From positions 1 to 64,000 of IMG/VR virus record IMGVR_UViG_3300031521_001337: a stretch of DNA of 64,000 nt. One strand, given 5' to 3'. The position numbers were made by a program, and so were the translations under genes. The notes under the pieces were generated by a model. The model had not been told where the DNA came from. It saw only the letters and a list, made by a program, of their open reading frames with translations, and made no database searches. This document shows, one piece after another, positions 1,438 to 34,748 of this stretch (within the stretch, counting starts at the first letter, position 1; every line of letters begins with the position of its first letter).

Positions 1438-1592
1438 CAAATGATACGCAAAAAATCTCAAATGATACGTCGGAATTTTCAAATGATACGCTCGAGTTTG
1501 TATGAAAACAGTTAAGTTATTGTGACACAGCGAATTACAAGGTTTCCATATACTTAATATATACTTAATAATTCTATACTTAATGTGGCTGT
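1438..1592 (+). repeat. 155-bp direct repeat copy 1 (iteron origin-like)
   Basis: Matches 34327-34481 with 2 mismatches. CAAATGATACG x3 at 21-bp spacing (1438, 1459, 1480) and TATACTTAAT x3 (1549, 1560, 1575). Confidence 0.95.
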
Positions 1593-1617
1593 ATTCAACA
1601 CATAACGGACTACAAAC

Positions 1618-1651
1618 AAAAAAGGCTGCTACATAATTGTAACAGCCTTTT
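1618..1651 (-). terminator. Intrinsic terminator after 1673..2296
   Basis: aaaaaggctg...cagcctttt hairpin. Confidence 0.7.
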
Positions 1652-1672
1652 AAATTTGGATTGATTTATTGA

Positions 1673-2296
1673 TTAGTCTTCTAATTCAATATCAATACTT
1701 GTATAATCTTCTGAATCTTCTGGATCAATATCATTACAATCAGTAGAATTACTAACTAAATATTTATTAATTAGATCATATTCTTTACTACCTCTTTCGC
1801 AATCTTGACTGATTGTCAACAATTTCTTTGCATCAAGTTCAGTTATATCTTTACCGATAACCAGTTCTGCTTCACGTCTTACTACTTCTCTAACTACTAT
1901 TTTAATTGTTTTACCTTCCATAATGTTGTTTGTTGTTTGTACTGTTTGGTCGTTTTCTTTACCAAATACTAAATTAATGTCGAAAATATCACCCTCTGCT
2001 AAAGAACTATATAATGCAGGTGGCATTATATTTCTACCAGTAATAGCTTTTAAGGCACTAATAAACTCATCTGACTTTGCTATTTCGTCTAAAATAGGTT
2101 GTAATAACGCTTCTAATTTAGGTGTAAATGTATGAGTACTTGTTAAGTATGTATTACTTATCATACCAGATATCATTGCACTCATTCTAATTTTATCTGA
2201 TTCCTCAGCTAAATTTTTAAAAACCATTTGTTTGATGTTTTTCTTAAAAACATCTTCTTGTCCAATTACAAAAATTTCACCCATAATATTAAGCAT
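1673..2296 (-). CDS. Hypothetical protein
   Basis: 207-aa ORF overlapping the upstream gene and followed by a terminator. Confidence 0.7.
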   Translation of the reverse strand: MLNIMGEIFVIGQEDVFKKNIKQMVFKNLAEESDKIRMSAMISGMISNTYLTSTHTFTPKLEALLQPILDEIAKSDEFISALKAITGRNIMPPALYSSLAEGDIFDINLVFGKENDQTVQTTNNIMEGKTIKIVVREVVRREAELVIGKDITELDAKKLLTISQDCERGSKEYDLINKYLVSNSTDCNDIDPEDSEDYTSIDIELED

Positions 2297-2582
2297 TTAA
2301 AAGGTTAATAATTTCTGCCTTCTCTTCTGCACTCATAGTACTTACAGAAGTCTTTAATGCTTCAATTCTTTGTGCTTTAATTTCGGCTTCTTTTTCAGCT
2401 TTCAATGCTGTTAAATTAGCTGTCCATTTCTCACACTTTTCAAGTTGTTCATCACACCTTTTTAGTAGCTCGTCAGATGTTAATAACTTACCAAATGAAG
2501 TACCATAAGAATCTATTGATTCTTTTCTCTGACCTACTTTTTTTACTTGTGCAGCATCTGCACTTTGAATATTTTTATTCAT
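2289..2582 (-). CDS. Hypothetical coiled-coil protein
   Basis: 97-aa ORF with a Bacteroidetes-type promoter upstream (TTTG-17nt-CACCTTTG, 2625-2653). Confidence 0.7.
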   Translation of the reverse strand: MNKNIQSADAAQVKKVGQRKESIDSYGTSFGKLLTSDELLKRCDEQLEKCEKWTANLTALKAEKEAEIKAQRIEALKTSVSTMSAEEKAEIINLLNA

Positions 2583-2694
2583 TTAAATAAAGCAATCTGT
2601 TTTAGTTTGTTTGTGATTGCGATACAAAGGTGCGACAATATGAAAAGCCCAAAAGTAATGGTTAAAATGGTCTAATTTACCTACCCCGCATTAA

Positions 2695-3564
2695 TTAATG
2701 CCACATAGCAGAATATTTATTAAATCTAAAGTCTTGTGTTTTGGTTTTAAACTCTCTATAACAGGACTTTAAATGTTCATCGCCATATAACCAATCTTCA
2801 TTATTATATATACCTGTAAGATATATTAATTTTGAAATAAAAGTAAATTTATTCAAAGATGCTATTTTATCTCCATTTTTAACAGGTTTATCTACAACAT
2901 ATTGTTTAAAGAAGTCAATCATTATTTTAGTGAATAGACAAATACGTGCATAATTTGGTGCATCTTTAGAATTACTTTCTTCAAGCTTAGCAGAATTTAA
3001 AACACTACCAGTTTTTAAACCGTTCAATTCCTCATCACATAACGAAGCCATTAAATAAATCGCTGTATTATTATCTATGACAATACTTTTTTTACCAATT
3101 TTCAACGTAATAGTAGCTTTCTGTTTAAATTCAATATCATTACCATTAATTTTACCTGTTGAATTATCATCTATAGCTTTTACAAATTTTTTCATTTGAC
3201 CAGCTGGACTTTCTTTTGCAACCAAACCACCTACACAATTAGTATATGCAAAATCAAATGCAAATAACAGAAAATACCAAAACTTTTTAGAATCTATATT
3301 AAACGCTTTTAATATGAGTTGTATATTTTTATCTTCTTCATCACCATTCATATAATCATTATAAGTAAAATTGGTTTTTATTGTACCTTGATTATAATTT
3401 TGCACAAAAGTATATAATCCATTCAATGAACACATTAACATACCATTTCCTTCAGCATCAAAATCTGCATCTGGAAGGTGCGTATAAACCATATTACATA
3501 CATATTCTAATAATGGTTCTTCTTCTATACAATCGTCTATATCAAACTGATCTACTACACTCAT
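2695..3564 (-). CDS. Hypothetical protein (standard code, TGG Trp only)
   Basis: Likely start MSVVDQF; TACTTTTG -7 element at 3583-3590. Confidence 0.7.
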   Translation of the reverse strand: MSVVDQFDIDDCIEEEPLLEYVCNMVYTHLPDADFDAEGNGMLMCSLNGLYTFVQNYNQGTIKTNFTYNDYMNGDEEDKNIQLILKAFNIDSKKFWYFLLFAFDFAYTNCVGGLVAKESPAGQMKKFVKAIDDNSTGKINGNDIEFKQKATITLKIGKKSIVIDNNTAIYLMASLCDEELNGLKTGSVLNSAKLEESNSKDAPNYARICLFTKIMIDFFKQYVVDKPVKNGDKIASLNKFTFISKLIYLTGIYNNEDWLYGDEHLKSCYREFKTKTQDFRFNKYSAMWH

Positions 3565-3590
3565 AATATTGTTATTTTTTGACAAAAGTA

Positions 3591-3625
3591 AAAAAAAGTC
3601 TGTAATCAACAAAGACTACAGACTT
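3591..3625 (-). terminator. Terminator closing the lysis cassette
   Basis: Minus strand aagtctgtagtc...gattacagacttttttt. Confidence 0.7.
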
Positions 3626-3630
3626 CAATA

Positions 3631-3837
3631 TTATTTACCAATCTTTTTATATTGGTAATCTACCCCAAACAAAGCACCTGCAAAGGTGCATATTTCCCCA
3701 AAGGCTACTAAAATACTGTTATGTATAACTCCAATGGGTACTACTCAAAAACCCATAAATAAAAGGCATATCCCAGCCAACACCAATACACAAGCTACTG
3801 CTAATTGTACGTTCAATTTTGTTTCTTTCAAATTCAT
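3631..3837 (-). CDS. Small two-TM holin-like protein (1 in-frame TGA=Trp); absent from ORF track
   Basis: MNLKETKLNVQLAVACVLVLAGICLLFMGF[W]VVPIGVIHNSILVAFGEICTFAGALFGVDYQYKKIGK; resembles Bacteroidetes phage lysis-cassette membrane proteins. Confidence 0.8.
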
Positions 3838-3858
3838 TACTTACTTTTTTATTTGTTT

Positions 3859-4452
3859 CTATTTTAACACCTTTATAAATCGAAAGTCTTTTACCTCTGA
3901 ATGAGGATTTAGTTCTTTCACTTCTATAACCTGTATTGTTTGTTTTTTCTGGAACAACCTTCACAAAAAGAATTTCTTTGGTGGTTTTATTGTTTCACGC
4001 TTATCATAAGTAATTGCTATTACTTCATTTCTTACTTTCAAATCTACATTAAGCGTATCTGGTGCTTTAAATTTCAAATCTAGGCTGTACCATTCATCAC
4101 CAGTTTTAGCTTCATAATCACGAATAAACACACTGTCTTTTAATGTTACAGTATCTTTTATTTGTGTTTGGGAATTTATAAAAACCGTTTCAGTTACCTT
4201 TTTAGGTTTAAGTTTTAATTCACCTATCAACGTTTTTACTTTTAAATCAGATGAATCTTTACTATCCTTCAAATCAGCTAAAGTAAATTGATAAACTACG
4301 TTCTTTCTAACTGATGCTTTATAGTTATTGGTAGCCGTTTTTAGCTCCTCATTCAGTTGTTTTGTGTGGTTATATGAAAACCACAATAAAACCCCACAAA
4401 TCAAAGCTATTGAAGCCAGCAGTATAATTAAATATTTCTTTATTGCTATCAT
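3859..4452 (-). CDS. DUF6549-like, spanin-like lysis protein (1 TGA=Trp)
   Basis: N-terminal TM plus coiled coil; read-through gives PPKKFFL[W]RLFQKKQTIQVIEVKELNPH, ending TAG at 3859. Confidence 0.75.
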
Positions 4453-4838
4453 TACGTTTTTATTAGTTGTTTCTTATTATCACCTTCTCTATATTCTATG
4501 TGAACTCAGGCAAAATTATGTTCATCTATCAACTGTCTAAACTCAAAATGTTCTTTTATTAGCTTATAAAGTAAAGCATTATCATCACAATCTAAATCAG
4601 CACAAGTACCTAATAAATGACCAGAAGTACTTACACCACCAACCGCTTTATTTACATCTGGACTTCTAAAACCGCTGTTAATTTTAATTGGTTTACCATA
4701 CAATTCCCTCAAAGGATCTAACACATTTGTAACTAATCTTTGCAGATTAGCTACTTGTGTTTCATTAGGAATATTTACTATCTTTTTATCTGTATGAACT
4801 AGTTCTTCATACGTGAATCATTTTGATACTATTTTCAT
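4452..4838 (-). CDS. Endolysin, peptidase M15A (2 TGA=Trp)
   Basis: LDPLRELYGKPIKINSGFRS, SGHLLGTCAD; read-through restores the catalytic [W]VHIEY motif. Confidence 0.9.
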
Positions 4839-4855
4839 ATTACATTTATTTGATA

Positions 4856-5890
4856 TTATTGTAATGGTGGTTGATTTGAAACGATAGCTGAGTAAGTTTG
4901 TGACCATCCATCATTATTAAAATTCACTCTATAATAGATTGTTGAACCTACAGAAAATTTTGATATTGCACTTGATAAATCAAAATATGCTGAGCCACTT
5001 TGTACTGATGTTCCTGGACTTGTAGTATTAGCATTACAAGTAGCTGATGTGTTAGTTAGGAACTCATTAGTAGTAAAATTAGAATCTGATGCAATTTCAA
5101 ATTTGATATTTACATTATTGTTTTGAACCCTCAAATCACCTAAAATATTTAATGATGCAATTATACCCGAATTACCTGTTTTTCTATATGCAAAGAAAGT
5201 CAAATCTGTATATCTCATTGAATTTGTCCAAGGGTCTGATGGTATTACTACAGAAAAAATATAACATTCACCATCTCCATTATTAGAGATTGCATCAATA
5301 CCACTTATCCATCTTCTATCGGGTGAACTCTTATGTACAACTTTAAACCAAGCTGTTGAACCAACAGTTAAAGCACTACCACCATCGGGTGGGCTTTGTG
5401 GGTTAATTTGAAATTGAAAATATGGGTAATATCCTGTTTGGTCACTTATCATTTTTACAAAGTTTGTATGTACAAAATCATTACCATATCTATTAAAATA
5501 TACATCAAAAGTATGAGCAATTGTAACAGGTGTTTTTGTGCTCATATCTTCTTTTGCATATACTATAGGTAATCTCATATATATAGGTGAATAATAATTT
5601 ATTGAATCGCTAGTTTTATACCCATTGTTTCCAGTGAACGTTATCCAGTTGTGGTCATAATTTCTAAAAACCCCAAGCGGATAACCTTGTTTTGGGAAAA
5701 CTGTTTGATTTTCATTTTGTCTTTGATATGGTGTTTTTCCAAAGTATGCAGATTGTTCTTTATAATCGGGACTATTAAAACCATATTCATTAACTAATGA
5801 ACTCAAACACAATGTTGATACATTATGAGTATTTAAACCTAGTTCTTGCCCTACTAATGTAGTAGTAATATTTGTTGATGGTAATGCCAT
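4856..5890 (-). CDS. Tail-associated protein
   Basis: MALPSTNITTTLVGQELG N-terminus typical of genes following Bacteroidetes phage fibres. Confidence 0.6.
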   Translation of the reverse strand: MALPSTNITTTLVGQELGLNTHNVSTLCLSSLVNEYGFNSPDYKEQSAYFGKTPYQRQNENQTVFPKQGYPLGVFRNYDHNWITFTGNNGYKTSDSINYYSPIYMRLPIVYAKEDMSTKTPVTIAHTFDVYFNRYGNDFVHTNFVKMISDQTGYYPYFQFQINPQSPPDGGSALTVGSTAWFKVVHKSSPDRRWISGIDAISNNGDGECYIFSVVIPSDPWTNSMRYTDLTFFAYRKTGNSGIIASLNILGDLRVQNNNVNIKFEIASDSNFTTNEFLTNTSATCNANTTSPGTSVQSGSAYFDLSSAISKFSVGSTIYYRVNFNNDGWSQTYSAIVSNQPPLQ

Positions 5891-5891
5891 A

Positions 5892-8800
5892 TTATTTATT
5901 TTTTAAAGTATTTATTTCTTGTGTTAGTTCTTGAATTGCTCCGATTAAATATGGTATTAACTTGATATAATCAACTGATAAAAATTCATCGTTATAAATG
6001 TTATGTACTAGGTTTGGAAGTACTTCTTTTAATTGCTGAGCAATAACACCAACATCTGTTTTTTCATCCTTATTTGGGTTTAATTCTTTAGCTTTTTCAT
6101 TCCAATTATATTGCACTGGATTTAATTTATTGATTACGTCCAAAGAATTATTTAATGGTTGAATGTTTTCTTTTAACCGTTCATCAGATGCACTATAAGC
6201 TACTATTTCACCCGCTGCTATTACATTTCCATTTGAAATAAAATTACTAGCAGTAACATTACCATTGAAATGAGAATTATCACTTCCATCAATATAAAAT
6301 GGAGTTGTACCATCGGAAGCATTTCTAATTGAAAATCCAGTGTTTGAAATTCCTTGTATTGAATTTTTAATATAGTATTGCTTAACTCCTGCTTGTGAAC
6401 CTTGTAATTGTATTCTTGCCTCACCTCCAACATCATTTCTAATTAGCACAGCACTTTTGTTAATTAGAGCAATATCACCTGTTCCACTTTCAGCACTAAT
6501 ATATACTGCATTGCCAGTAAACTGTAAGTAACCTTGTCTAACTGTATTTGCTGAATTATAACCACTCAAATAAGCGGCATCAGCAATCATTTTTATTCCC
6601 TCACCTGCATAAGTATTAACAGTTCCAGTTGCCATTAAAGTACCATTCACTGCCAACTTATACCCTTGGTCAGAAATATATCCAATCCCAGTATTACCAT
6701 TAGGGCTAATATAAAACCTCCCAATATCGGGTACTGTATTAGCACTTTGGGTTGATTGAGTAGTAATTGCAAAATCTCCATAAGACTGATAATCTGTATG
6801 TATGAACCATTTCCTAGAACTACCATTAGATACATTATGGTCAAATGATAACATTCCTACCCAACCTGAACCGCTAGGCAATGATAATCTTCCGTTAATT
6901 CCCATCCCACCATTAAGAACTAATGCTCCTGTTGATGGTGATAGTGATTGAGTTGTGTTTGGTATACTTACTACTCCATTACTTTCAATAGTCAATAAGG
7001 GAGTAGTTGCATAATTAAAAGTAAAGGCTTTGTTTCCCCACTGTCCAACAGAATTAAAAATCATTGACCCATAATTATCTCCACTACTAATAAAATAGTC
7101 AAAAGAAGAACCTGAACCAAATTTTAATTTACCTGAATAATTATTAGATGGTATATTAATAGCAAAATAATCACCTCTAGCTGATGCATTTGTCCCATCA
7201 TCACTTATCAAACTATTTACAAAATTACTCCCATTCCATTTAGGAATGTAGTTTGTTGATAAACTTGATAAATCTTGTGTAGCAATATTATTTACGCCAA
7301 TAAAATTTCTAATTTGAGTACTAGTAGCAGGACTCATTCTAGCATTAGGGGCATCGTATACCATTACATAACTTACCGTAGACGCAAAATCAGCGCCATA
7401 GTATTTTAAACCATTTACCATTTCAGCATTCAAATTCCCCACCATAGTAGTAGAATTTACAGTTAATGGTGCTGTTCCAGTTGCTACTGTTGATTGTAGT
7501 TGAGTTGCATTTACTGTAGAAGTAAAAGTTACTGCTCCTGTTTTACTTAACCTAAATCTTTCTGTATAAGTATGTGCAATAGCTTCTGTATTGTATGCTC
7601 TAGCATCAGAATAATCAATTACTAAATCAGTACCACTTCCACTGTATTTGTTGGCAATTCTATAAACTCTTTGGTCAGTTCCACCATCGGCATATAAGTA
7701 CATAGCACTACCATAATCAGAATCCAATGCTCTTAATTCAACACTATGATATGTTACACCAAATTTGCCTTTTCCATACGCTGTAACATCCCCACTAATC
7801 CACATATTTGCAGATTGTGCAGAGCTATTTTGGTTTAATATGTGGTCGTTATTGTTGGTATAAGCCGATGAACCTAGACCTAACCAAGATTGTATTTGAT
7901 TTTGTGTAAAATTATAAACATATCCGTTAGAGTAACCTCCTAGTAAATTAGTAGGTACGGATTGATTAGCAGTTCCATTATATACTGTTCCTAGTGTTAT
8001 ACTAGAGCCTAAAGTCCCACTAGAAGATACAAAGTCTCCAGTGTTACTACTGGCTGCTGAACCGAATGTTCTAGTAGGTAGTGGAGTATAACCTAAAGCA
8101 GTAGTAACCATTCCTGAGTTGATACCAGTTATCCATCCACCGTAGTTACCAAGATTATTATTAAATTGACTGAGATTAGTTGGAAAATCACTAACCTGCG
8201 ACTTAGTAATGCTTATGCCAGTAGATTTATTCCATGCAATAAATATAGGGTCAGTTTCAGTAAAACTAGATAAATAGTTATGTGTATGAGTAGTTATTAG
8301 TCCAGTAAGAACTCCTTCAACTTGGGATTTAGTTATACTAGAAATATAACCACTAGGATTTGTAGAATTATAGGGAGTGTATCCTAATGCTGTAGTAACT
8401 TGAGTTCCAGTTATACCAGTAAGATATCCATATCCAGTCCAAGGAGTACCAGTAACAAATGAACCATAATTACCTAAATCATTAGTAAATTGAGATAATA
8501 ATGTAGGTTTAGAAGTTATTTCTGAATAAGCGTAGCTTGGTTTTGTAGAAGCTTTAGCTCATGAATAAACATCACTAGCTGGTAAAGTTGTAGGATAATC
8601 TGGTAAACCATATCCACTAGTTGTGGTAGGATGGCTACCTGAGTATCAATATCCAACTGATGTTCATGGAGTTCCAGAAACATATGATGTATTATCATAA
8701 GTAATAGAAGTTCCAGACATTCTAACTAGACCAGTACCATTTAATTGAGCTTGAGCTCCAATATCTAATAAAGTTAATCCATGTGGATTACCGCTATTTA

Positions 8801-22080: not shown

Positions 22081-23529
22081 TTAATTTATATTTAATATTG
22101 TGCATCCATTAGTTAAGATCAGTGATGCTACTGATACTGCATTTTCTAAAGCTATCTTTGTTACTAGGAAAGGATCTACGATTCCCATTTCATACATGTC
22201 TCCAATTTGTCTAGTCTTATAGTCTTTACCTTCCCAGAAATTGAAAATATCTATACCATCTGCTTTATTCTCAGATAGTATTAAATTAGGCATTACCAAT
22301 ACTTTACTTAAATATTTTAAGTCTAAAAGTTTAGCAGCTCTAAGTAATGAGAAACCTCCACCAGGTAATATACCATCTGTCATAGCAGCTCTAACCGCAC
22401 AAATAGCATCTTCTAATCTATCTTTCTTTTCTTGTATTTCAACTTGAGAATATCCACCAACAAATATAGTAGCTATACCACCAATATAATTAGCTAATCT
22501 CTTTCTTTGAAACGTCATTTCAAACTCAGTTGTACTACAACTAAGTGTATTTTTTACTTCTAATATTTTAGCATCAATAACCGATTGGTTAGATTCACAT
22601 CCTATTAGATATGTAGTATCTTTTGATACTATAATTTTTTCACAAACTGAAGTAGAAGCAATACATTCGATATCATCAAGTAAAGTTTCTCTATAGATAC
22701 CATGTCCGGGTGAACTAATAAAACAAGACTTTAGATTTCCTGTATTATTATTATGTACTAGAGTTCTTAGTATTGTGGATTCCATTTTTGGAGCAATAAT
22801 AAGAAGTGCTTTCTTTTCTCTCATAGCTCTACTACATACTTCGTCAATATCTTTAATCTCAGTTAAAGGTATTCTAAAAACTGCAATTAATACATTTTCT
22901 AGTTCACATGTACTCTTAGTTGTATTAACAAAGTATGGTGAGTTATATCCTGATTCAATTTTAACTCCTTGTGAAAACACAACTGAATTATGTGTATCTT
23001 GTGAATCTTCTATAGTTACTACTCCATCTTTTGTAACTTTAAAATAAGTTTCAGCTACAAGTTTACCAAGTTCAATATCATTATTTGTAGATACTGTGGC
23101 AACTTTAATTAAGTCTTCTACACTTGTGATTGTTCTTTTATTCTTTTCCAAATATTCTATAACTTGTTTGAGTTCTTTATCTAACTCTCTACTTATAGCA
23201 ATTGGATTTTCAGTCTTATCTTTTAAAGTATTAACTAAAGTTTGAGCAAGAATAGTTGCAGTGGTTGTACCATCTCCAACATCAGTTGCTGTTTTAGTTG
23301 CAATACCTTTTATAAGTTCAATACCTGTACTAATAAATGGATCATCATCGTTTACATATTTTGCAACGGTTGCTCCATCCTTTGTTATATACACTCCTGA
23401 GAGTCCTTTGATTATAACATTTTTTCCATTAGGTCCGAATGTTGTTGACACAGCATCGCCTATTAAATTCACTCCTTCAATTAAGATGTCTTTTGCATCT
23501 CCATTAAATAAAACATTTTTCATTATCAT
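22081..23529 (-). CDS. groEL: GroEL-like chaperonin (short, 482 aa)
   Basis: TFGPNGKNV, ITKDGATVA, GDGTTTAT, EKKDRLEDA, GILPGGG, GIVDP. Confidence 0.93.
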   Translation of the reverse strand: MIMKNVLFNGDAKDILIEGVNLIGDAVSTTFGPNGKNVIIKGLSGVYITKDGATVAKYVNDDDPFISTGIELIKGIATKTATDVGDGTTTATILAQTLVNTLKDKTENPIAISRELDKELKQVIEYLEKNKRTITSVEDLIKVATVSTNNDIELGKLVAETYFKVTKDGVVTIEDSQDTHNSVVFSQGVKIESGYNSPYFVNTTKSTCELENVLIAVFRIPLTEIKDIDEVCSRAMREKKALLIIAPKMESTILRTLVHNNNTGNLKSCFISSPGHGIYRETLLDDIECIASTSVCEKIIVSKDTTYLIGCESNQSVIDAKILEVKNTLSCSTTEFEMTFQRKRLANYIGGIATIFVGGYSQVEIQEKKDRLEDAICAVRAAMTDGILPGGGFSLLRAAKLLDLKYLSKVLVMPNLILSENKADGIDIFNFWEGKDYKTRQIGDMYEMGIVDPFLVTKIALENAVSVASLILTNGCTILNIN

Positions 23530-29143: not shown

Positions 29144-29174
29144 AAAAAAGCCCACTACTTTTGATAATGGGCTT
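29144..29174 (-). terminator. Terminator upstream of nrdJ
   Basis: Minus strand aagccc...gggctttttt. Confidence 0.65.
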
Positions 29175-29996: not shown

Positions 29997-30014
29997 ATTT
30001 ATTCTATCATTTTG

Positions 30015-30087
30015 CACCCTTGGTAAGACTCGAACTCACACTTACAAATTTTGAAGATTTGTGTGCTAACCATTACACTACAAAGGT
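30015..30087 (-). tRNA. Opal suppressor tRNA, anticodon UCA (predicted Trp-charged)
   Basis: ACCTTTG TA GTGT AATGGTTA GCAC A CAAAT CT-TCA-AA ATTTG TAAGT GTGAG TTCGAGT CTTAC CAAGGGT G; full cloverleaf with A1-U72 and G73, short variable loop. Confidence 0.93.
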
Positions 30088-30116: not shown

Positions 30117-30545
30117 TTATATTAGTTTTGTAATATCTATTACTTTACTTAGTGTTGAATCAACAACAAAGATATTGTTACCTGTAATAGAATAACTTCC
30201 ATTTTCTTCTTGACCCCATAACCTTAACCAATCTTTTAACCATACTCTATGAGGAGTAAACATTATATAAGTATTTCCAGTTGCATTTTCTGATTCTGCA
30301 TTTACATCGGTAATCATATCAGTAACCATAGTAACGATTGGTCAGCGATTTTTCCTATCAACTTCCATTAATATTAATTCTAAATCTACTGTTGCAATTG
30401 GTGAACTATAATATTCGCCTGCACTTTTATTAGGATCGTTAAAAACTTCGACGAGTTCATCATCAAATCTAACAGTCCATTCACCTTTAACCCAAGTATT
30501 TTCTTCTGTGGGTTTGTAATTAAATTTCTTTAGTATTTCTTCCAT
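30117..30545 (-). CDS. Hypothetical protein, 1 TGA joining two track ORFs
   Basis: DRKNR[W]PIVTMVTDM in frame. Confidence 0.6.
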
Positions 30546-32475: not shown

Positions 32476-32730
32476 TTAATTTATTTATTAGTTTGTCTAC
32501 TTTATTTAGTTTACGTAATGCATCGTTAACATTAAGATCTGGATCACATTCTAATTCGATAAGTAATCTAATCTTATAATTGTTAAGCTTCTTGAGAGTT
32601 CTCTTTAATTGTTTGTCCATATTCTTTGTAAAAATTAGTCCATTTATTTATATAATATTCATCATTCTCTGGAGTTGATCTTGTAATTATTATTTCTTGA
32701 TAATTAGATAGAAATAATGTTATTGTAGAT

Positions 32731-33102
32731 TTAGTCTTCTTTGTATTTAGTATTGTTATCATTTAACATTTTAATCATTCATATCATACTATCATCATCT
32801 GTGTAATCTGAGAAATCGTTATAACCTCTTCGGGTATATCATTCATACATTCAACTATCCCGTTTAACTCATAAAAAGGATTGTGTAGCTCCGAGTTCTA
32901 TTCCTATTTTCTCTCTTAGTTCCTGCATTTTAGTTCCAAGTCCTTGTTCTCTTTCGTTATTCTCAACACTTAAAGAGTTTAAGTAAACTGATTTTGGATC
33001 ATCATGGAATCAATACATCCTAGCATAAGCTTTCCCTTCAATTTCCATAATGTATAATTCATCATGGTCGTCATTACGAACGAAGTGTTGTATTACTTCC
33101 AT
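32731..33102 (-). CDS. GNAT-family acetyltransferase, 123 aa, 5 TGA=Trp; absent from ORF track
   Basis: VYLNSLSVENNEREQGLGTKM (motif A), FL[W]V, [W]YTRRGY (motif B). Confidence 0.8.
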
Positions 33103-33414
33103 TTATTTTAATAAATCTATAGTTGCTATAGTATTTTTAAATATATTTGTAAATAATAATTTATTAAATAAACTTGAATTTAATTCCTCATATAAAAGTT
33201 TATGTACAGTATCATCATACTCTTTATAATATATTAATGCATTTACAACAATGATTTCTTCATCGTGATTATAATGAACTATTTTTGCATATATTTGCTT
33301 TTTATCTGTATCATTATATTCTTTCAATTCAAATTTATAATTAGTTGGATTATATTTAGTTTGAATATTATTTAATTTATTTATTATTTCTATTGTTAAT
33401 TCTTTTCCAGACAT
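33103..33414 (-). CDS. Hypothetical protein
   Basis: 103-aa ORF coupled to the rep stop. Confidence 0.55.
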   Translation of the reverse strand: MSGKELTIEIINKLNNIQTKYNPTNYKFELKEYNDTDKKQIYAKIVHYNHDEEIIVVNALIYYKEYDDTVHKLLYEELNSSLFNKLLFTNIFKNTIATIDLLK

Positions 33415-34187
33415 TATAATGTTATTTCGTTATTAGTGTTTTCTTCGTAAGGAGTATATTCTCCTTTAAGTTTCATTTGTTTTCTTAGATGATTTAGTTC
33501 TTGTTCTAATTGATTTACTTTTATATTTAAATCAGTTATTGCAACATCGTGTTCTTTAATTTTACACATAACAAATTGTCCAAACTTAGGAAGATTAAAT
33601 TCAAGTGCTTCACAAGAGTTACCTTCCATATCTGTAGTTGTTCTTCTGTTTATAAAACCAAGTGATTCTAATTCTCGTCTACGTTCTTGTGCTACTGTTT
33701 TAGATATACCTGTTATTTCTGAAATTTCAATATCACTATAAGTAGTTTTACCTATTCCAGTTTCTTTATCAATATATAAATAAGGTTGCATAATCATATA
33801 ATATGATTTCTGTAAACTATTAAGTTCTTTATTTTCGAGGAAACTTAAATCATACATTTCAAACTTGTCGGAATGTGGATTAAATTTATATCCATTTTGA
33901 TTTCGTCCACCTTCCATTTTAATTTTTGTTACATCTCCTGCTTCTTCTAATCTTTTAATTGCAGCTGATACACCACCGACCGACATGTCAATCGAGTCTG
34001 CTATAATTTTTAAGGATATAAATGCCACCATTGTTTTTCCGTCCATATTTTTTCGAAGAAAACCATAAACTAAGACATCAGTATAGTGCTTTTTGTATTT
34101 AGATTTCTTATCACTGTCTACATTGTTAGCGACAGAGTTTGGCACTTGGACGTGTCTATTTGTTTTCTTTTCTTTTTCTTCACTCAT
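33414..34187 (-). CDS. Replication initiator-like protein (two winged HTH plus coiled coil)
   Basis: HVQVPN, SLKIIADSIDMSVGGVSAAIKRLEEAG, SDIEISEITGISKTVAQERRRELESLGFI; adjacent to iterons. Confidence 0.7.
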   Translation of the reverse strand: MSEEKEKKTNRHVQVPNSVANNVDSDKKSKYKKHYTDVLVYGFLRKNMDGKTMVAFISLKIIADSIDMSVGGVSAAIKRLEEAGDVTKIKMEGGRNQNGYKFNPHSDKFEMYDLSFLENKELNSLQKSYYMIMQPYLYIDKETGIGKTTYSDIEISEITGISKTVAQERRRELESLGFINRRTTTDMEGNSCEALEFNLPKFGQFVMCKIKEHDVAITDLNIKVNQLEQELNHLRKQMKLKGEYTPYEENTNNEITL

Positions 34188-34326
34188 CGTATTAAATTTG
34201 ATACACAAAGATAAGAAATTTGTGTGACAAAAATACTATACACATAGTTAAAAAATGTTAAGTCACTGATATACAATTACTTCGAGCATATCATTTGTAA
34301 TCGGTTAATAGTCAATAAGATAACTC

Positions 34327-34481
34327 CAAATGATACGCAAAAAATCTCAAATGATACGTCGGAATTTTCAAATGATACGCTCGAGTTTGTATGAAAACGG
34401 TTAAGTTATTGTGACACAGTGAATTACAAGGTTTCCATATACTTAATATATACTTAATAATTCTATACTTAATGTGGCTGT
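34327..34481 (+). repeat. 155-bp direct repeat copy 2; putative phage replication origin
   Basis: Three 21-bp-spaced CAAATGATACG iterons plus AT-rich TATACTTAAT x3; inverted iteron at 34287-34297; lies at the strand switch beside rep. Confidence 0.9.
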
Positions 34482-34748
34482 CCGTAAAACTTTACATATT
34501 GATACGCAAAATTTGTTGTATCAAACGCAAAAGTTTACTATATATACGAACGCGCGCGTAGTAAAATTAATTTTATTAAAAGGTAGAAGATATAAAAAGT
34601 ATTGAAAATAATTTTTAGGAAGTTCTGAATAATTTTTTTTGAAAAAATTTTTTTATTTTTATGAATCGAGTGGGTGGACAGTCATCTCTTCTACCCCCAG
34701 CAGGTCTTGAATGGAAAGTAAACTACTAACAAACAAAACTCTATCATT

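What the first reader, a model, noticed from the sequence alone, without database searches (positions are those of the whole stretch)
32731..33102. Hidden GNAT acetyltransferase whose five Trp codons are all TGA
It is invisible under code 11 and has a very high TGA density (5 in 123 codons), yet it lies two genes after rep rather than among structural genes. Its output should depend steeply on suppressor level. Speculation: it modifies a host translation or defence component once the code switch is thrown.
Basis: partly seen in the sequence, partly recalled or inferred. Interest (0 to 1): 0.6.

Follow-up and report, generated by a model that had tools for sequence, protein, structure and literature searches.

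The report
Suppressor-tRNA-gated phage mini-GNAT acetyltransferase
A peat jumbo phage that reads the stop codon TGA as tryptophan late in infection carries an intact small acetyltransferase gene, all five of whose tryptophans are TGA, so it can only be made once the phage's own suppressor tRNA is working; this is a clear but not unprecedented case of a known phage trick.

Summary
On the minus strand, 32731-33102 is a 123-codon frame with five in-frame TGA, no TGG and a TAA stop, and it cannot be seen under code 11. It is a real, intact GNAT-fold gene. The AlphaFold model has pLDDT 94 and matches solved GNATs at Z 12-14. The acetyl-CoA motif R51-x-x-G54-x-G56 is present, and dN/dS among relatives is 0.16-0.40. 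TGA means Trp here: the five sites are Trp in 57-99% of 150 family representatives, and four of them are TGG in the cultured standard-code Tenacibaculum phage PTm1. The genome (about 205 kb, from peat) is a typical TGA-recoded phage. Coding density rises from 0.80 to 0.92 under code 4. TGA makes up about 60% of Trp codons in structural genes and about 9% in the replication block. A lone tRNA(UCA) lies 2.6 kb downstream of the GNAT in the same tightly packed leftward gene string, which starts with a rep-like gene. The GNAT is the only all-TGA gene among 40 Trp-rich genes of the early block. Its translation must therefore wait for the suppressor tRNA. I could not show that this gating is selected rather than tolerated drift. 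The family is common in standard-code phages, so a role specific to the code switch is unlikely, and the substrate is unknown. Recoding in phages and a TGA-biased gene inside an early region have both been published, so this is a new member of a known kind.

The parts
32731..33102 (-). CDS of a 123-aa mini-GNAT acetyltransferase (P0001), readable only with TGA=Trp; TAA stop
33010..33012 (-). TGA codon 31 (Trp in 57% of family representatives; Thr in PTm1)
32869..32871 (-). TGA codon 78 (Trp in 59% of family; TGG in PTm1)
32851..32853 (-). TGA codon 84 (Trp in 95% of family; TGG in PTm1)
32839..32841 (-). TGA codon 88 (Trp in 99% of family; TGG in PTm1; aligns with Trp of PDB 1vkc)
32779..32781 (-). 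TGA codon 108 (Trp in 93% of family; TGG in PTm1)
32935..32952 (-). codons 51-56, R-E-Q-G-L-G: GNAT motif A (R/Q-x-x-G-x-G/A), the acetyl-CoA pyrophosphate-binding loop
   Evidence: R51, G54 in at least 90% of family; G56 in 136 of 151
30014..30087 (-). tRNA with anticodon UCA (TGA suppressor), 74 nt, ordinary cloverleaf, A1:U72, G73; same strand as the GNAT and 2.6 kb downstream of it; apart from the phage's tRNA cluster
33414..34208 (-). 264-aa winged-helix replication-initiator-like protein ('rep'), first gene of the leftward string; no Trp codon
33103..33414 (-). 103-aa ORF of unknown function; its stop abuts the GNAT start; no Trp codon; no family hit
32583..32762 (-). 59-aa ORF overlapping the GNAT 3' end by 32 nt; absent from a wastewater relative
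30117..30545 (-). 142-aa Trp-rich ORF just upstream of the suppressor tRNA; 1 TGA + 5 TGG here, 3 + 3 in relative L004 (TGG/TGA swaps at codons 102 and 110)
34209..34748 (.). divergent intergenic region with AAATGATACG-type iterons next to rep (origin-like); likely start of the leftward and rightward units
29148..29174 (-). predicted intrinsic terminator (11-bp stem plus T run); likely end of the rep-GNAT-tRNA unit

Best explanation
The locus encodes an intact acetyl-CoA-dependent N-acetyltransferase of a phage-borne 'mini-GNAT' family of about 110-140 aa that lacks the usual alpha1-alpha2 arm. In this phage lineage all five of its Trp codons, four of them highly conserved, have become TGA. 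The phage infects a host that reads TGA as stop and carries a single tRNA(UCA). Before that tRNA is made, processed and charged, ribosomes stop at codon 31 and no enzyme is produced. Afterwards the full-length protein is made, with yield roughly proportional to the fifth power of per-codon suppression. So the gene lies in the rep-proximal leftward gene string, probably on the same transcript as the suppressor tRNA, but its product belongs to the post-switch (middle or late) phase. Shown: the gene is intact, has a GNAT fold and CoA motif, TGA stands for Trp, the genome is recoded, the tRNA exists, the arrangement is as described, and the gene is under purifying selection. Inferred: co-transcription, the timing, and that the acceptor is a macromolecule (host or phage protein) rather than a small molecule.
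For: The frame and its five TGA are. Pfam Acetyltransf_1 scores 22.3 bits against a cut-off of 20.7, and 91 of 99 family members hit Acetyltransf_7. With a 99-sequence alignment the AF2 model reaches pLDDT 94.3 and pTM 0.85. It matches solved GNATs at Z 12-14, rmsd 1.8-2.7 A over 100-116 residues, and Foldseek returns 81 PDB hits at E<=1e-3, every one of those listed being a GNAT. The family profile hits 114 PDB sequences at E<=0.01, and the 60 best that are listed are all GNAT-type acetyltransferases. The five TGA sites are Trp in 57, 59, 95, 99 and 93% of 150 representatives, and four are TGG in PTm1 ORF-154 (39% identity, E 4e-20). The orthologue of a neighbouring gene swaps TGG and TGA. 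dN/dS is 0.16-0.40 with dS up to 0.66. Coding density is 0.80 under code 11 and 0.92 under code 4. The TGA share of Trp codons is 0.59-0.61 in the blocks holding portal, terminase and tail fibre, against 0.09 in the replication block. tRNA(UCA) scores 62.9 bits in Rfam. The gene string is tightly packed, with one predicted terminator at 29.15 kb. The sequence is identical in independent peat runs.
Against: There are no expression or proteomic data. Co-transcription with the tRNA is inferred only from gene packing and one consensus terminator, and an internal late promoter cannot be excluded. The suppressor tRNA is not a close copy of the phage tRNA-Trp (68% identity), so Trp charging is inferred from protein alignments rather than from the tRNA itself. 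The host and its genetic code are not identified. Two low-coverage relatives carry substitutions in the CoA loop (G56R in P0003, G54N in P0004). The substrate is unknown.
Confidence: 0.7

Rival explanations
1. The gate is adaptive. Premature acetyltransferase activity would harm the infection, for example by modifying host transcription or translation machinery that is still needed. Selection therefore keeps all Trp codons as TGA, which gives a leak-proof off state and a steep on switch.
For: It is the only all-TGA gene among 40 early-block genes with at least 4 Trp codons. The five TGA are retained in four lineages with dS up to 0.66. There are precedents: a TGA-biased homing endonuclease inside an early gene of Agate phages (Borges et al. 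preprint), and the phage GNAT Rac, which inhibits host growth and acts at the early-to-late shift (PMC7552054).
Against: Retention is not significant against neutral expectation (P about 0.13 from Lys/Glu/Gln A/G turnover; P = 0.078 from the late-gene TGA share). Three late genes are also all-TGA. Toxicity has not been tested.
Confidence: 0.3
2. The pattern is passive drift. The enzyme is simply not needed before the switch, so AT-biased mutation in a 29.6% GC genome turned TGG into TGA without any regulatory meaning.
For: Late genes show about 60% TGA, and 10 of 25 are at least 80% TGA. The high TGA density comes from the family's naturally high Trp content of 5-7 Trp per protein. The statistical tests for selection on TGA are not significant.
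Against: This does not explain why this gene alone, in an otherwise TGG-using block, escaped selection against TGA. 5 of 5 lies at the upper end even for late genes.
Confidence: 0.4
3. The GNAT is part of the code-switch machinery. It would acetylate RF2, a ribosomal protein or a tRNA to raise UGA read-through, forming a positive feedback loop with the suppressor tRNA.
For: It lies on the same strand and in the same gene string as the only tRNA(UCA). The phage encodes no RF1 or TrpRS that could otherwise help the switch. RimI and N-terminal acetyltransferases are among the structural neighbours.
Against: The family is common in standard-code phages, including cultured PTm1, which has no tRNA genes. 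It has no conserved neighbours. The structural matches are generic GNATs.
Confidence: 0.05
4. The gene is a decayed pseudogene and the TGA are nonsense mutations.
For: In another phage lineage with the standard code (L041, L047, L053; GC 50%; TGA the commonest stop) the same family carries a TGA at the invariant Trp88, probably a true nonsense mutation.
Against: Here all five TGA fall exactly on family Trp positions, with no other stop or frameshift. dN/dS is 0.16-0.40 across four lineages. The genome is recoded throughout and has a suppressor tRNA.
Confidence: 0.02
5. The TGA codons are a legacy of horizontal transfer from a donor that uses code 4, such as another recoded phage, rather than conversion in place.
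For: The gene is an accessory gene shared between otherwise unrelated jumbo phages: only 3 proteins are shared with PTm1.
Against: Synteny rep, about 105-aa ORF, GNAT is kept down to 60% identity. The gene's GC (32%) matches the genome. No other TGA-coded member turned up in IMG/VR or JGI metagenomes.
Confidence: 0.1

Closest known systems
TGA-to-Trp (code 4) recoded phages with a suppressor tRNA, e.g. the Agate and Jade clades (Borges et al., bioRxiv 10.1101/2021.08.26.457843)
   Same: Low GC. TGA is enriched in structural genes and avoided in replication genes. A phage tRNA(UCA) is present. Coding density is restored under code 4. The early region is compatible with a standard-code host.
   Different: This phage is from peat and is about 205 kb, not from a gut. 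It encodes no RF1 or TrpRS. The most TGA-dense gene is an accessory enzyme in the rep-proximal string, not a lysis or tail gene.
TGA-biased group I intron homing endonuclease inside an early gene of Agate phages (same paper, section 8)
   Same: It is a non-structural gene embedded in a standard-code early region that prefers TGA over TGG, so its product should appear only after the code switch.
   Different: That gene is a selfish endonuclease and its bias was shown statistically across many genomes. Here the gene is a GNAT enzyme, only four lineages are available, and the bias is not statistically separable from drift.
Tenacibaculum phage PTm1 ORF-154 (BBI90546.1), annotated hypothetical protein
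   Same: It is the closest homologue in a cultured phage: 39% identity over 120 residues, the same length class, and the same motifs (R-x-x-G-x-G, W-x-x-x-W-Y-x-R-R-G-Y, I-W-M-x-K).
   Different: It uses the standard code with every Trp as TGG. PTm1 has no tRNA genes, the genomic context differs, and the two phages are otherwise unrelated (3 shared proteins).
Rac (LUZ19 gp28), the GNAT of phiKMV-like phages (PMC7552054)
   Same: It is a small phage GNAT outside the structural module. Its acetyl-CoA site is needed for host take-over at the early-to-late shift, and it inhibits host growth.
   Different: I detected no sequence relationship: tblastn of P0001 against phage genomes found only PTm1 and PTm5. 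Rac is not gated by recoding, and its effect (RNAP alpha cleavage) cannot be transferred by analogy.
AcrVA5, the anti-CRISPR GNAT that acetylates Cas12a
   Same: It is a very small phage or mobile-element GNAT acting on a host defence protein.
   Different: No similarity beyond the superfamily was seen here: it is absent from the 60 best PDB profile hits and the 50 best structural hits that are listed. No link to Cas12a is known for this phage.
GNAT toxins of type II toxin-antitoxin pairs (TacT, AtaT, KacT)
   Same: GNAT fold, and a small ORF directly upstream with abutting stop and start.
   Different: The upstream ORF is not conserved with the family. The protein is about 40-50 residues shorter and lacks alpha1-alpha2. 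No RHH or other antitoxin family hit was found.

Membership tests
GNAT (Gcn5-related N-acetyltransferase) superfamily | Sequence match to GNAT profiles above curated thresholds | tested here: met
   Acetyltransf_1 scores 22.3 bits against a cut-off of 20.7 for P0001. Of 99 family members, 86 hit Acetyltransf_1 and 91 hit Acetyltransf_7. The profile hits 114 PDB sequences at E<=0.01, and the 60 best that are listed are all GNAT-type acetyltransferases.
GNAT (Gcn5-related N-acetyltransferase) superfamily | Mixed alpha/beta GNAT core fold (beta2-4, alpha3, beta5, alpha4, beta6) | tested here: met
   The model has pLDDT 94.3. It matches GNAT structures at Z 12-14 with 100-116 residues aligned.
GNAT (Gcn5-related N-acetyltransferase) superfamily | Motif A, R/Q-x-x-G-x-G/A, acetyl-CoA pyrophosphate loop between beta4 and alpha3 | tested here: met
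   R51-E-Q-G54-L-G56. Across 151 aligned family sequences R51 occurs in 137, G54 in 134 and G56 in 136. The motif aligns to the same loop of 1vkc.
GNAT (Gcn5-related N-acetyltransferase) superfamily | N-terminal beta1-alpha1-alpha2 arm that shapes the acceptor site | tested here: not met
   The model has four beta strands (residues 3-46) before alpha3 and no alpha1/alpha2. This is a truncated 'mini' variant. The arm is typical of the family but is not required for CoA binding.
GNAT (Gcn5-related N-acetyltransferase) superfamily | Acetyl transfer from acetyl-CoA to an amine acceptor | not testable with these tools
   This needs an enzyme assay on a TGG-recoded protein.
Stop-codon-recoded (TGA=Trp) phage infecting a standard-code host | Coding density and gene length are restored when TGA is read as sense | tested here: met
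   Coding density 0.80 becomes 0.92, and median ORF length 121 becomes 141 aa.
Stop-codon-recoded (TGA=Trp) phage infecting a standard-code host | In-frame TGA aligns with Trp in homologues | tested here: met
   Four of 5 sites are TGG-Trp in PTm1. The family alignment shows Trp in 57-99% of sequences at the five sites. TGG/TGA swaps occur between orthologues. This was tested on this gene and one neighbour only.
Stop-codon-recoded (TGA=Trp) phage infecting a standard-code host | Phage-encoded suppressor tRNA with anticodon UCA | tested here: met
   Found at 30014-30087(-), scoring 62.9 bits in Rfam, 74 nt, with no long variable arm, so it is not a Sec tRNA.
Stop-codon-recoded (TGA=Trp) phage infecting a standard-code host | Recoded codons concentrated in late or structural genes and avoided in early or replication genes | tested here: met
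   The TGA share is 0.59-0.61 against 0.09. Portal, terminase and tail fibre are recoded.
Stop-codon-recoded (TGA=Trp) phage infecting a standard-code host | The host uses the standard code | not tested
   The host is unknown (peat metagenomes). A standard-code host is inferred only from TGA avoidance in more than 100 early genes.
GNAT/RHH type II toxin-antitoxin toxin (TacT/AtaT-like) | Conserved cognate antitoxin gene directly upstream | tested here: not met
   No protein within 3.5 kb either side of the GNAT is shared with 47 other family loci. The upstream ORF has no Pfam or PHROG hit.

The most novel reading that the evidence does not exclude
The TGA-studded GNAT frame and the suppressor tRNA downstream on the same transcript form a self-reinforcing switch. 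This could work in either of two ways. Read-through of the five TGA might relieve polarity on the tRNA gene. Or the enzyme itself might acetylate a termination or translation component so that UGA decoding locks in. In either case the gene would be the trigger of the code change, not merely a passenger of it.
Probability: 0.05. Interest if true: 0.85.

Novelty: new member of a known kind. Interest (0 to 1): 0.4.

Why it matters
It is a clean, testable example of stop-codon recoding acting on an accessory enzyme rather than on virion or lysis genes, inside the gene string that also carries the suppressor tRNA. The gene is short, has five gates, and has a TGG-coded homologue in a cultured phage. 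That makes it a convenient natural reporter for how sharply and how late a phage code switch turns on. It also flags a large, uncharacterised phage mini-GNAT family (373 clusters at E<=1e-10) whose target is unknown. In addition, it shows TGA recoding in a peat jumbo phage, outside the gut systems where recoding has mostly been described. Standard-code gene callers will miss such genes.

Tried and rejected
1. Pseudogene: rejected, because the TGA fall only at family Trp sites, dN/dS is 0.16-0.40, and the genome is recoded.
2. Selenocysteine: ARAGORN labels the tRNA 'SeC' only because of its anticodon. It is a 74-nt ordinary cloverleaf.
3. Close kinship with Tenacibaculum phage PTm1: rejected. 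Only 3 proteins hit at 1e-8, and PTm1 has no tRNA genes.
4. Toxin-antitoxin or other conserved partner: none was found.
5. Phage-encoded RF1/RF2 or TrpRS: none was found.
6. Ribozyme or other RNA element beside the tRNA: Rfam at E<=0.1 found only the tRNA in 28-36 kb.
7. Rho-polarity idea: the mRNA after the first TGA is G-rich rather than C-rich (C 12%, G 19%), so it does not look like a rut site.
8. Test for selection on TGA: not significant.
9. Search for other TGA-coded members: the IMG/VR motif scan and the JGI metagenome scan found only this same phage. Three standard-code contigs carry a probable nonsense TGA at Trp88. The scans required an exact 11-codon motif, so diverged members can be missed.
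10. megablast of the region against phage genomes: no match.
11. The search for related loci with the 99-sequence alignment failed for lack of a conserved stretch. A smaller alignment found one locus.
13. One search failed because of a mistyped reference of mine and was corrected.
14. Read laying used contigs only, so it says nothing about expression. The two runs labelled RNA are probably DNA and hold a relative of about 93% identity.

Full report
**What is there.** The finding's coordinates are exact, but the gene is on the minus strand. window:32731-33102:- starts with ATG and ends with TAA. It has 123 sense codons, of which codons 31, 78, 84, 88 and 108 are TGA, and none is TGG. Under code 11 the frame breaks after 30 codons and no ORF of 40 aa or more is listed for it. 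Under code 4 it is a single ORF. It abuts the stop of the upstream 103-aa ORF (33103-33414) and overlaps the next small ORF by 32 nt.

**The genome.** The window is the first 64 kb of a 213,486-bp IMG/VR virus record with 29.6% GC.
- Reading TGA as sense raises coding density from 0.80 to 0.92. Reading TAG or TAA as sense helps much less.
- The minus-strand blocks at 1.7-26.9 kb and 130-198 kb hold the tail fibre, portal and large terminase. They use TGA for 59-61% of Trp codons.
- The plus-strand block at 34.7-130.4 kb (helicases, polymerase-type genes, tRNA cluster) uses TGA for 9%.
- The phage has about 24 tRNA genes in a plus-strand cluster, including tRNA-Trp(CCA), and a tmRNA.
- The only tRNA with anticodon UCA stands alone at 30014-30087 on the minus strand. 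It is an ordinary 74-nt cloverleaf with A1:U72 and G73 (read), not a selenocysteine tRNA.
- No release factor or TrpRS gene was found.
- The phage occurs in 22 peat metagenome runs.

This is the published pattern of TGA-recoded phages that infect standard-code hosts (Borges et al. preprint). Jumbo phages with recoding and suppressor tRNAs have also been surveyed (PMC13037316).

**TGA is Trp in this gene.** Four lines of evidence agree.
- Four database relatives (60-89% identity) have Trp at all five sites. The three whose DNA could be fetched have TGA at the same five codons and no TGG.
- The cultured, standard-code Tenacibaculum phage PTm1 has a homologue, ORF-154 (39% identity, E 4e-20). There, four of the five sites are TGG-coded Trp and the fifth is Thr.
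- A profile search of 1.84 billion cluster representatives found 373 relatives at E<=1e-10. In an alignment of 151 sequences the five sites are Trp in 57, 59, 95, 99 and 93%.
- In the neighbouring 142-aa gene, orthologues exchange TGG and TGA at two Trp codons.

**It is an intact GNAT.**
- Pfam Acetyltransf_1 passes its gathering score narrowly for this protein and clearly for the family.
- With a 99-sequence alignment AlphaFold2 gives pLDDT 94.3 and pTM 0.85.
- The model aligns to solved GNATs at Z 12-14, including the Elp3 acetyltransferase domain, PaiA, Ard1/Naa10, RimI and GCN5. A first, shallower model already gave only GNATs.
- The acetyl-CoA loop R51-x-x-G54-x-G56 and the alpha4 motif W88-Y89-x-R-x-G93-Y94 are nearly invariant in the family.
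- The protein lacks the alpha1-alpha2 arm of canonical GNATs, which leaves an open acceptor side. This is why I lean, weakly, toward a macromolecular acceptor.
- dN/dS among the four lineages is 0.16-0.40 with dS up to 0.66, so the gene is under purifying selection.
- The sequence is identical in independent peat assemblies. A wastewater relative of about 93% identity shows no listed change at a TGA codon, though not all of its differences were listed.

**Context.**
- The first gene of the leftward string (33414-34208) is a winged-helix protein that hits replication-initiator PHROGs. It sits next to an intergenic region with AAATGATACG iterons.
- From there to about 29.15 kb the genes overlap or are at most 105 nt apart. 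One strong intrinsic-terminator-like hairpin follows at 29174-29148.
- The order is therefore rep, a 103-aa ORF, the GNAT, seven small ORFs, a 142-aa Trp-rich ORF (one conserved TGA), tRNA(UCA), and two more ORFs. That these form one transcript is an inference.
- The class-II-type ribonucleotide reductase just beyond has 14 TGG and no TGA.
- The same rep, roughly 105-aa ORF, GNAT order is kept in the 60%-identity relative.

**How unusual the gene is.**
- Among 40 early-block genes with at least four Trp codons it is the only one that is all TGA. Three others reach 50% or more: an AAA ATPase, a 152-aa ORF and a doubtful ORF in the tRNA cluster.
- Given early-block usage, P(5 of 5 TGA) = 6.5e-6. 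Given late-block usage it is 0.078. The gene therefore looks like a strongly recoded late gene placed in an early neighbourhood.
- Its extreme TGA density is partly a family trait, since members carry 5-7 Trp in about 120 residues.
- Rep and the 103-aa ORF have no Trp codon at all, so they say nothing about TGA avoidance.

**Mechanism.**
- What is shown: in a cell that terminates at UGA, the ribosome stops at codon 31. Full-length enzyme needs five successive suppression events by the phage tRNA(UCA).
- What follows from established knowledge: spontaneous UGA read-through is of the order of 1e-3 to 1e-2 per codon, so five sites give an essentially leak-free off state. Yield then rises as the fifth power of suppression efficiency: 0.1 gives 1e-5, 0.5 gives 0.03, and 0.9 gives 0.59.
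- What is not shown: whether this gating is selected. The five Trp columns show no TGA/TGG variation, while 5 of 15 conserved Lys/Glu/Gln columns show A/G synonymous variation (P about 0.13). Three late genes are also all-TGA.
- My reading: a functional enzyme whose production is confined to the post-switch phase (0.7). Adaptive gating (0.3) and tolerated drift (0.4) remain open sub-readings of that.

**Function.**
- Nothing ties the enzyme to the code switch itself. Of 48 family loci found in IMG/VR by a motif that accepts either Trp codon, 43 have TGG at both scanned sites, and only this phage has TGA at both.
- Three standard-code contigs have a probable nonsense TGA at Trp88.
- A JGI metagenome scan for the TGA-TGA form returned only this same phage, on a 205,452-bp contig.
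- Family members sit in varied places, for example beside radical-SAM and acyl-carrier genes, or between portal and a large head-module gene. No neighbour recurs.
- Known phage GNATs with worked-out roles are Rac, which shuts down host transcription at the early-to-late shift and inhibits growth, and AcrVA5, which acetylates Cas12a. They show what such an enzyme can do, but I detected no specific relationship to either.

**Verdict.** The regulatory consequence (no product until the suppressor acts) follows from the sequence. The steep-switch and host-modification ideas remain untested, and a role specific to the code switch is unlikely. Borges et al. already described recoded phages and a TGA-biased non-structural gene inside an early region, so this is a new member of a known kind. 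Its value is mainly as a compact experimental handle and as a pointer to an uncharacterised phage mini-GNAT family.

Noticed in passing
window 30014-30087 (-): The only tRNA(UCA) of the genome lies apart from the cluster of about 24 tRNAs at 76.5-88.8 kb. It is not a close copy of the phage tRNA-Trp(CCA): 68% identity, with its best match, 70%, to tRNA-Gln. It has A1:U72 and G73.
   Followed up: partly
window 34328-34520 and 1438-1592: The divergent intergenic region beside rep holds at least three AAATGATACG iteron-like repeats. A 155-bp stretch (34327-34481) recurs at 1438-1592 with 98.7% identity, which may mark a second origin-like element or an assembly joint.
   Followed up: partly
window 1592-8180; G000 206898-213486 and 182881-184828: The last 6.6 kb of the record repeats 1592-8180 at 99.9% identity (offset 205,306 bp). 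A 1.95-kb piece of the tail-fibre gene has a third copy inside another large gene. A JGI contig of the same phage is 205,452 bp (L075). The unit genome is therefore probably about 205 kb, and the record's first 1.6 kb may be a joint artefact.
   Followed up: partly
G000 68160-68568 (outside the window; L076 261-669): The phage encodes a full-length tmRNA (Rfam RF00023, 107 bits).
   Followed up: partly
window 30117-30545 (-): A 142-aa ORF of unknown function, among the most Trp-rich in the genome, lies directly upstream of the suppressor tRNA. It has one conserved TGA (codon 68) and 5 TGG. Relative L004 has 3 TGA and 3 TGG.
   Followed up: partly
window 33103-34208 (-): Rep (264 aa) and the following 103-aa ORF together have 367 codons and not a single Trp codon of either kind. 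About 4 would be expected from the genome average.
   Followed up: no
window 22081-23529 (-): A GroEL-like chaperonin (phrog_5725, E 4.6e-107) sits inside the TGA-rich late block but has no TGA. Three Trp-containing late genes in all are TGA-free.
   Followed up: no
G000 65753-66949, 89481-89939, 129708-130415 (L067-L069): These are further TGA-bearing genes in the mainly TGG-using plus-strand block: an AAA ATPase (3 TGA/1 TGG), a 152-aa unknown (3/1), and a lysozyme or tail-associated hydrolase-like protein at the end of the block (2/0).
   Followed up: partly
L041, L047, L053 (IMG/VR contigs, GC about 50%): These standard-code phages, in which TGA is the commonest stop, carry the same GNAT family with TGA in place of the invariant Trp88, while near-identical relatives have TGG. 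This is probably a genuine nonsense mutation.
   Followed up: partly
window 32621-32769: A relative of about 93% identity in two wastewater runs replaces these 149 nt with 10 nt. That removes most of the 59-aa ORF 32583-32762 and also the last dozen or so codons of the GNAT (its poorly conserved tail), whose end the 10 inserted letters replace.
   Followed up: no
G000 72247-73677 and 124633-124887: A nicotinamide phosphoribosyltransferase and a thioredoxin are the only other proteins shared with Tenacibaculum phage PTm1 at E<1e-8.
   Followed up: no
G000 82862-83123: ARAGORN reports odd tRNA-like genes with long variable arms in a row: 'Tyr(ata)', one with an undetermined anticodon, and an 82-nt tRNA-Trp(cca). 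Rfam confirms the last two as tRNA at 52 and 43 bits.
   Followed up: no
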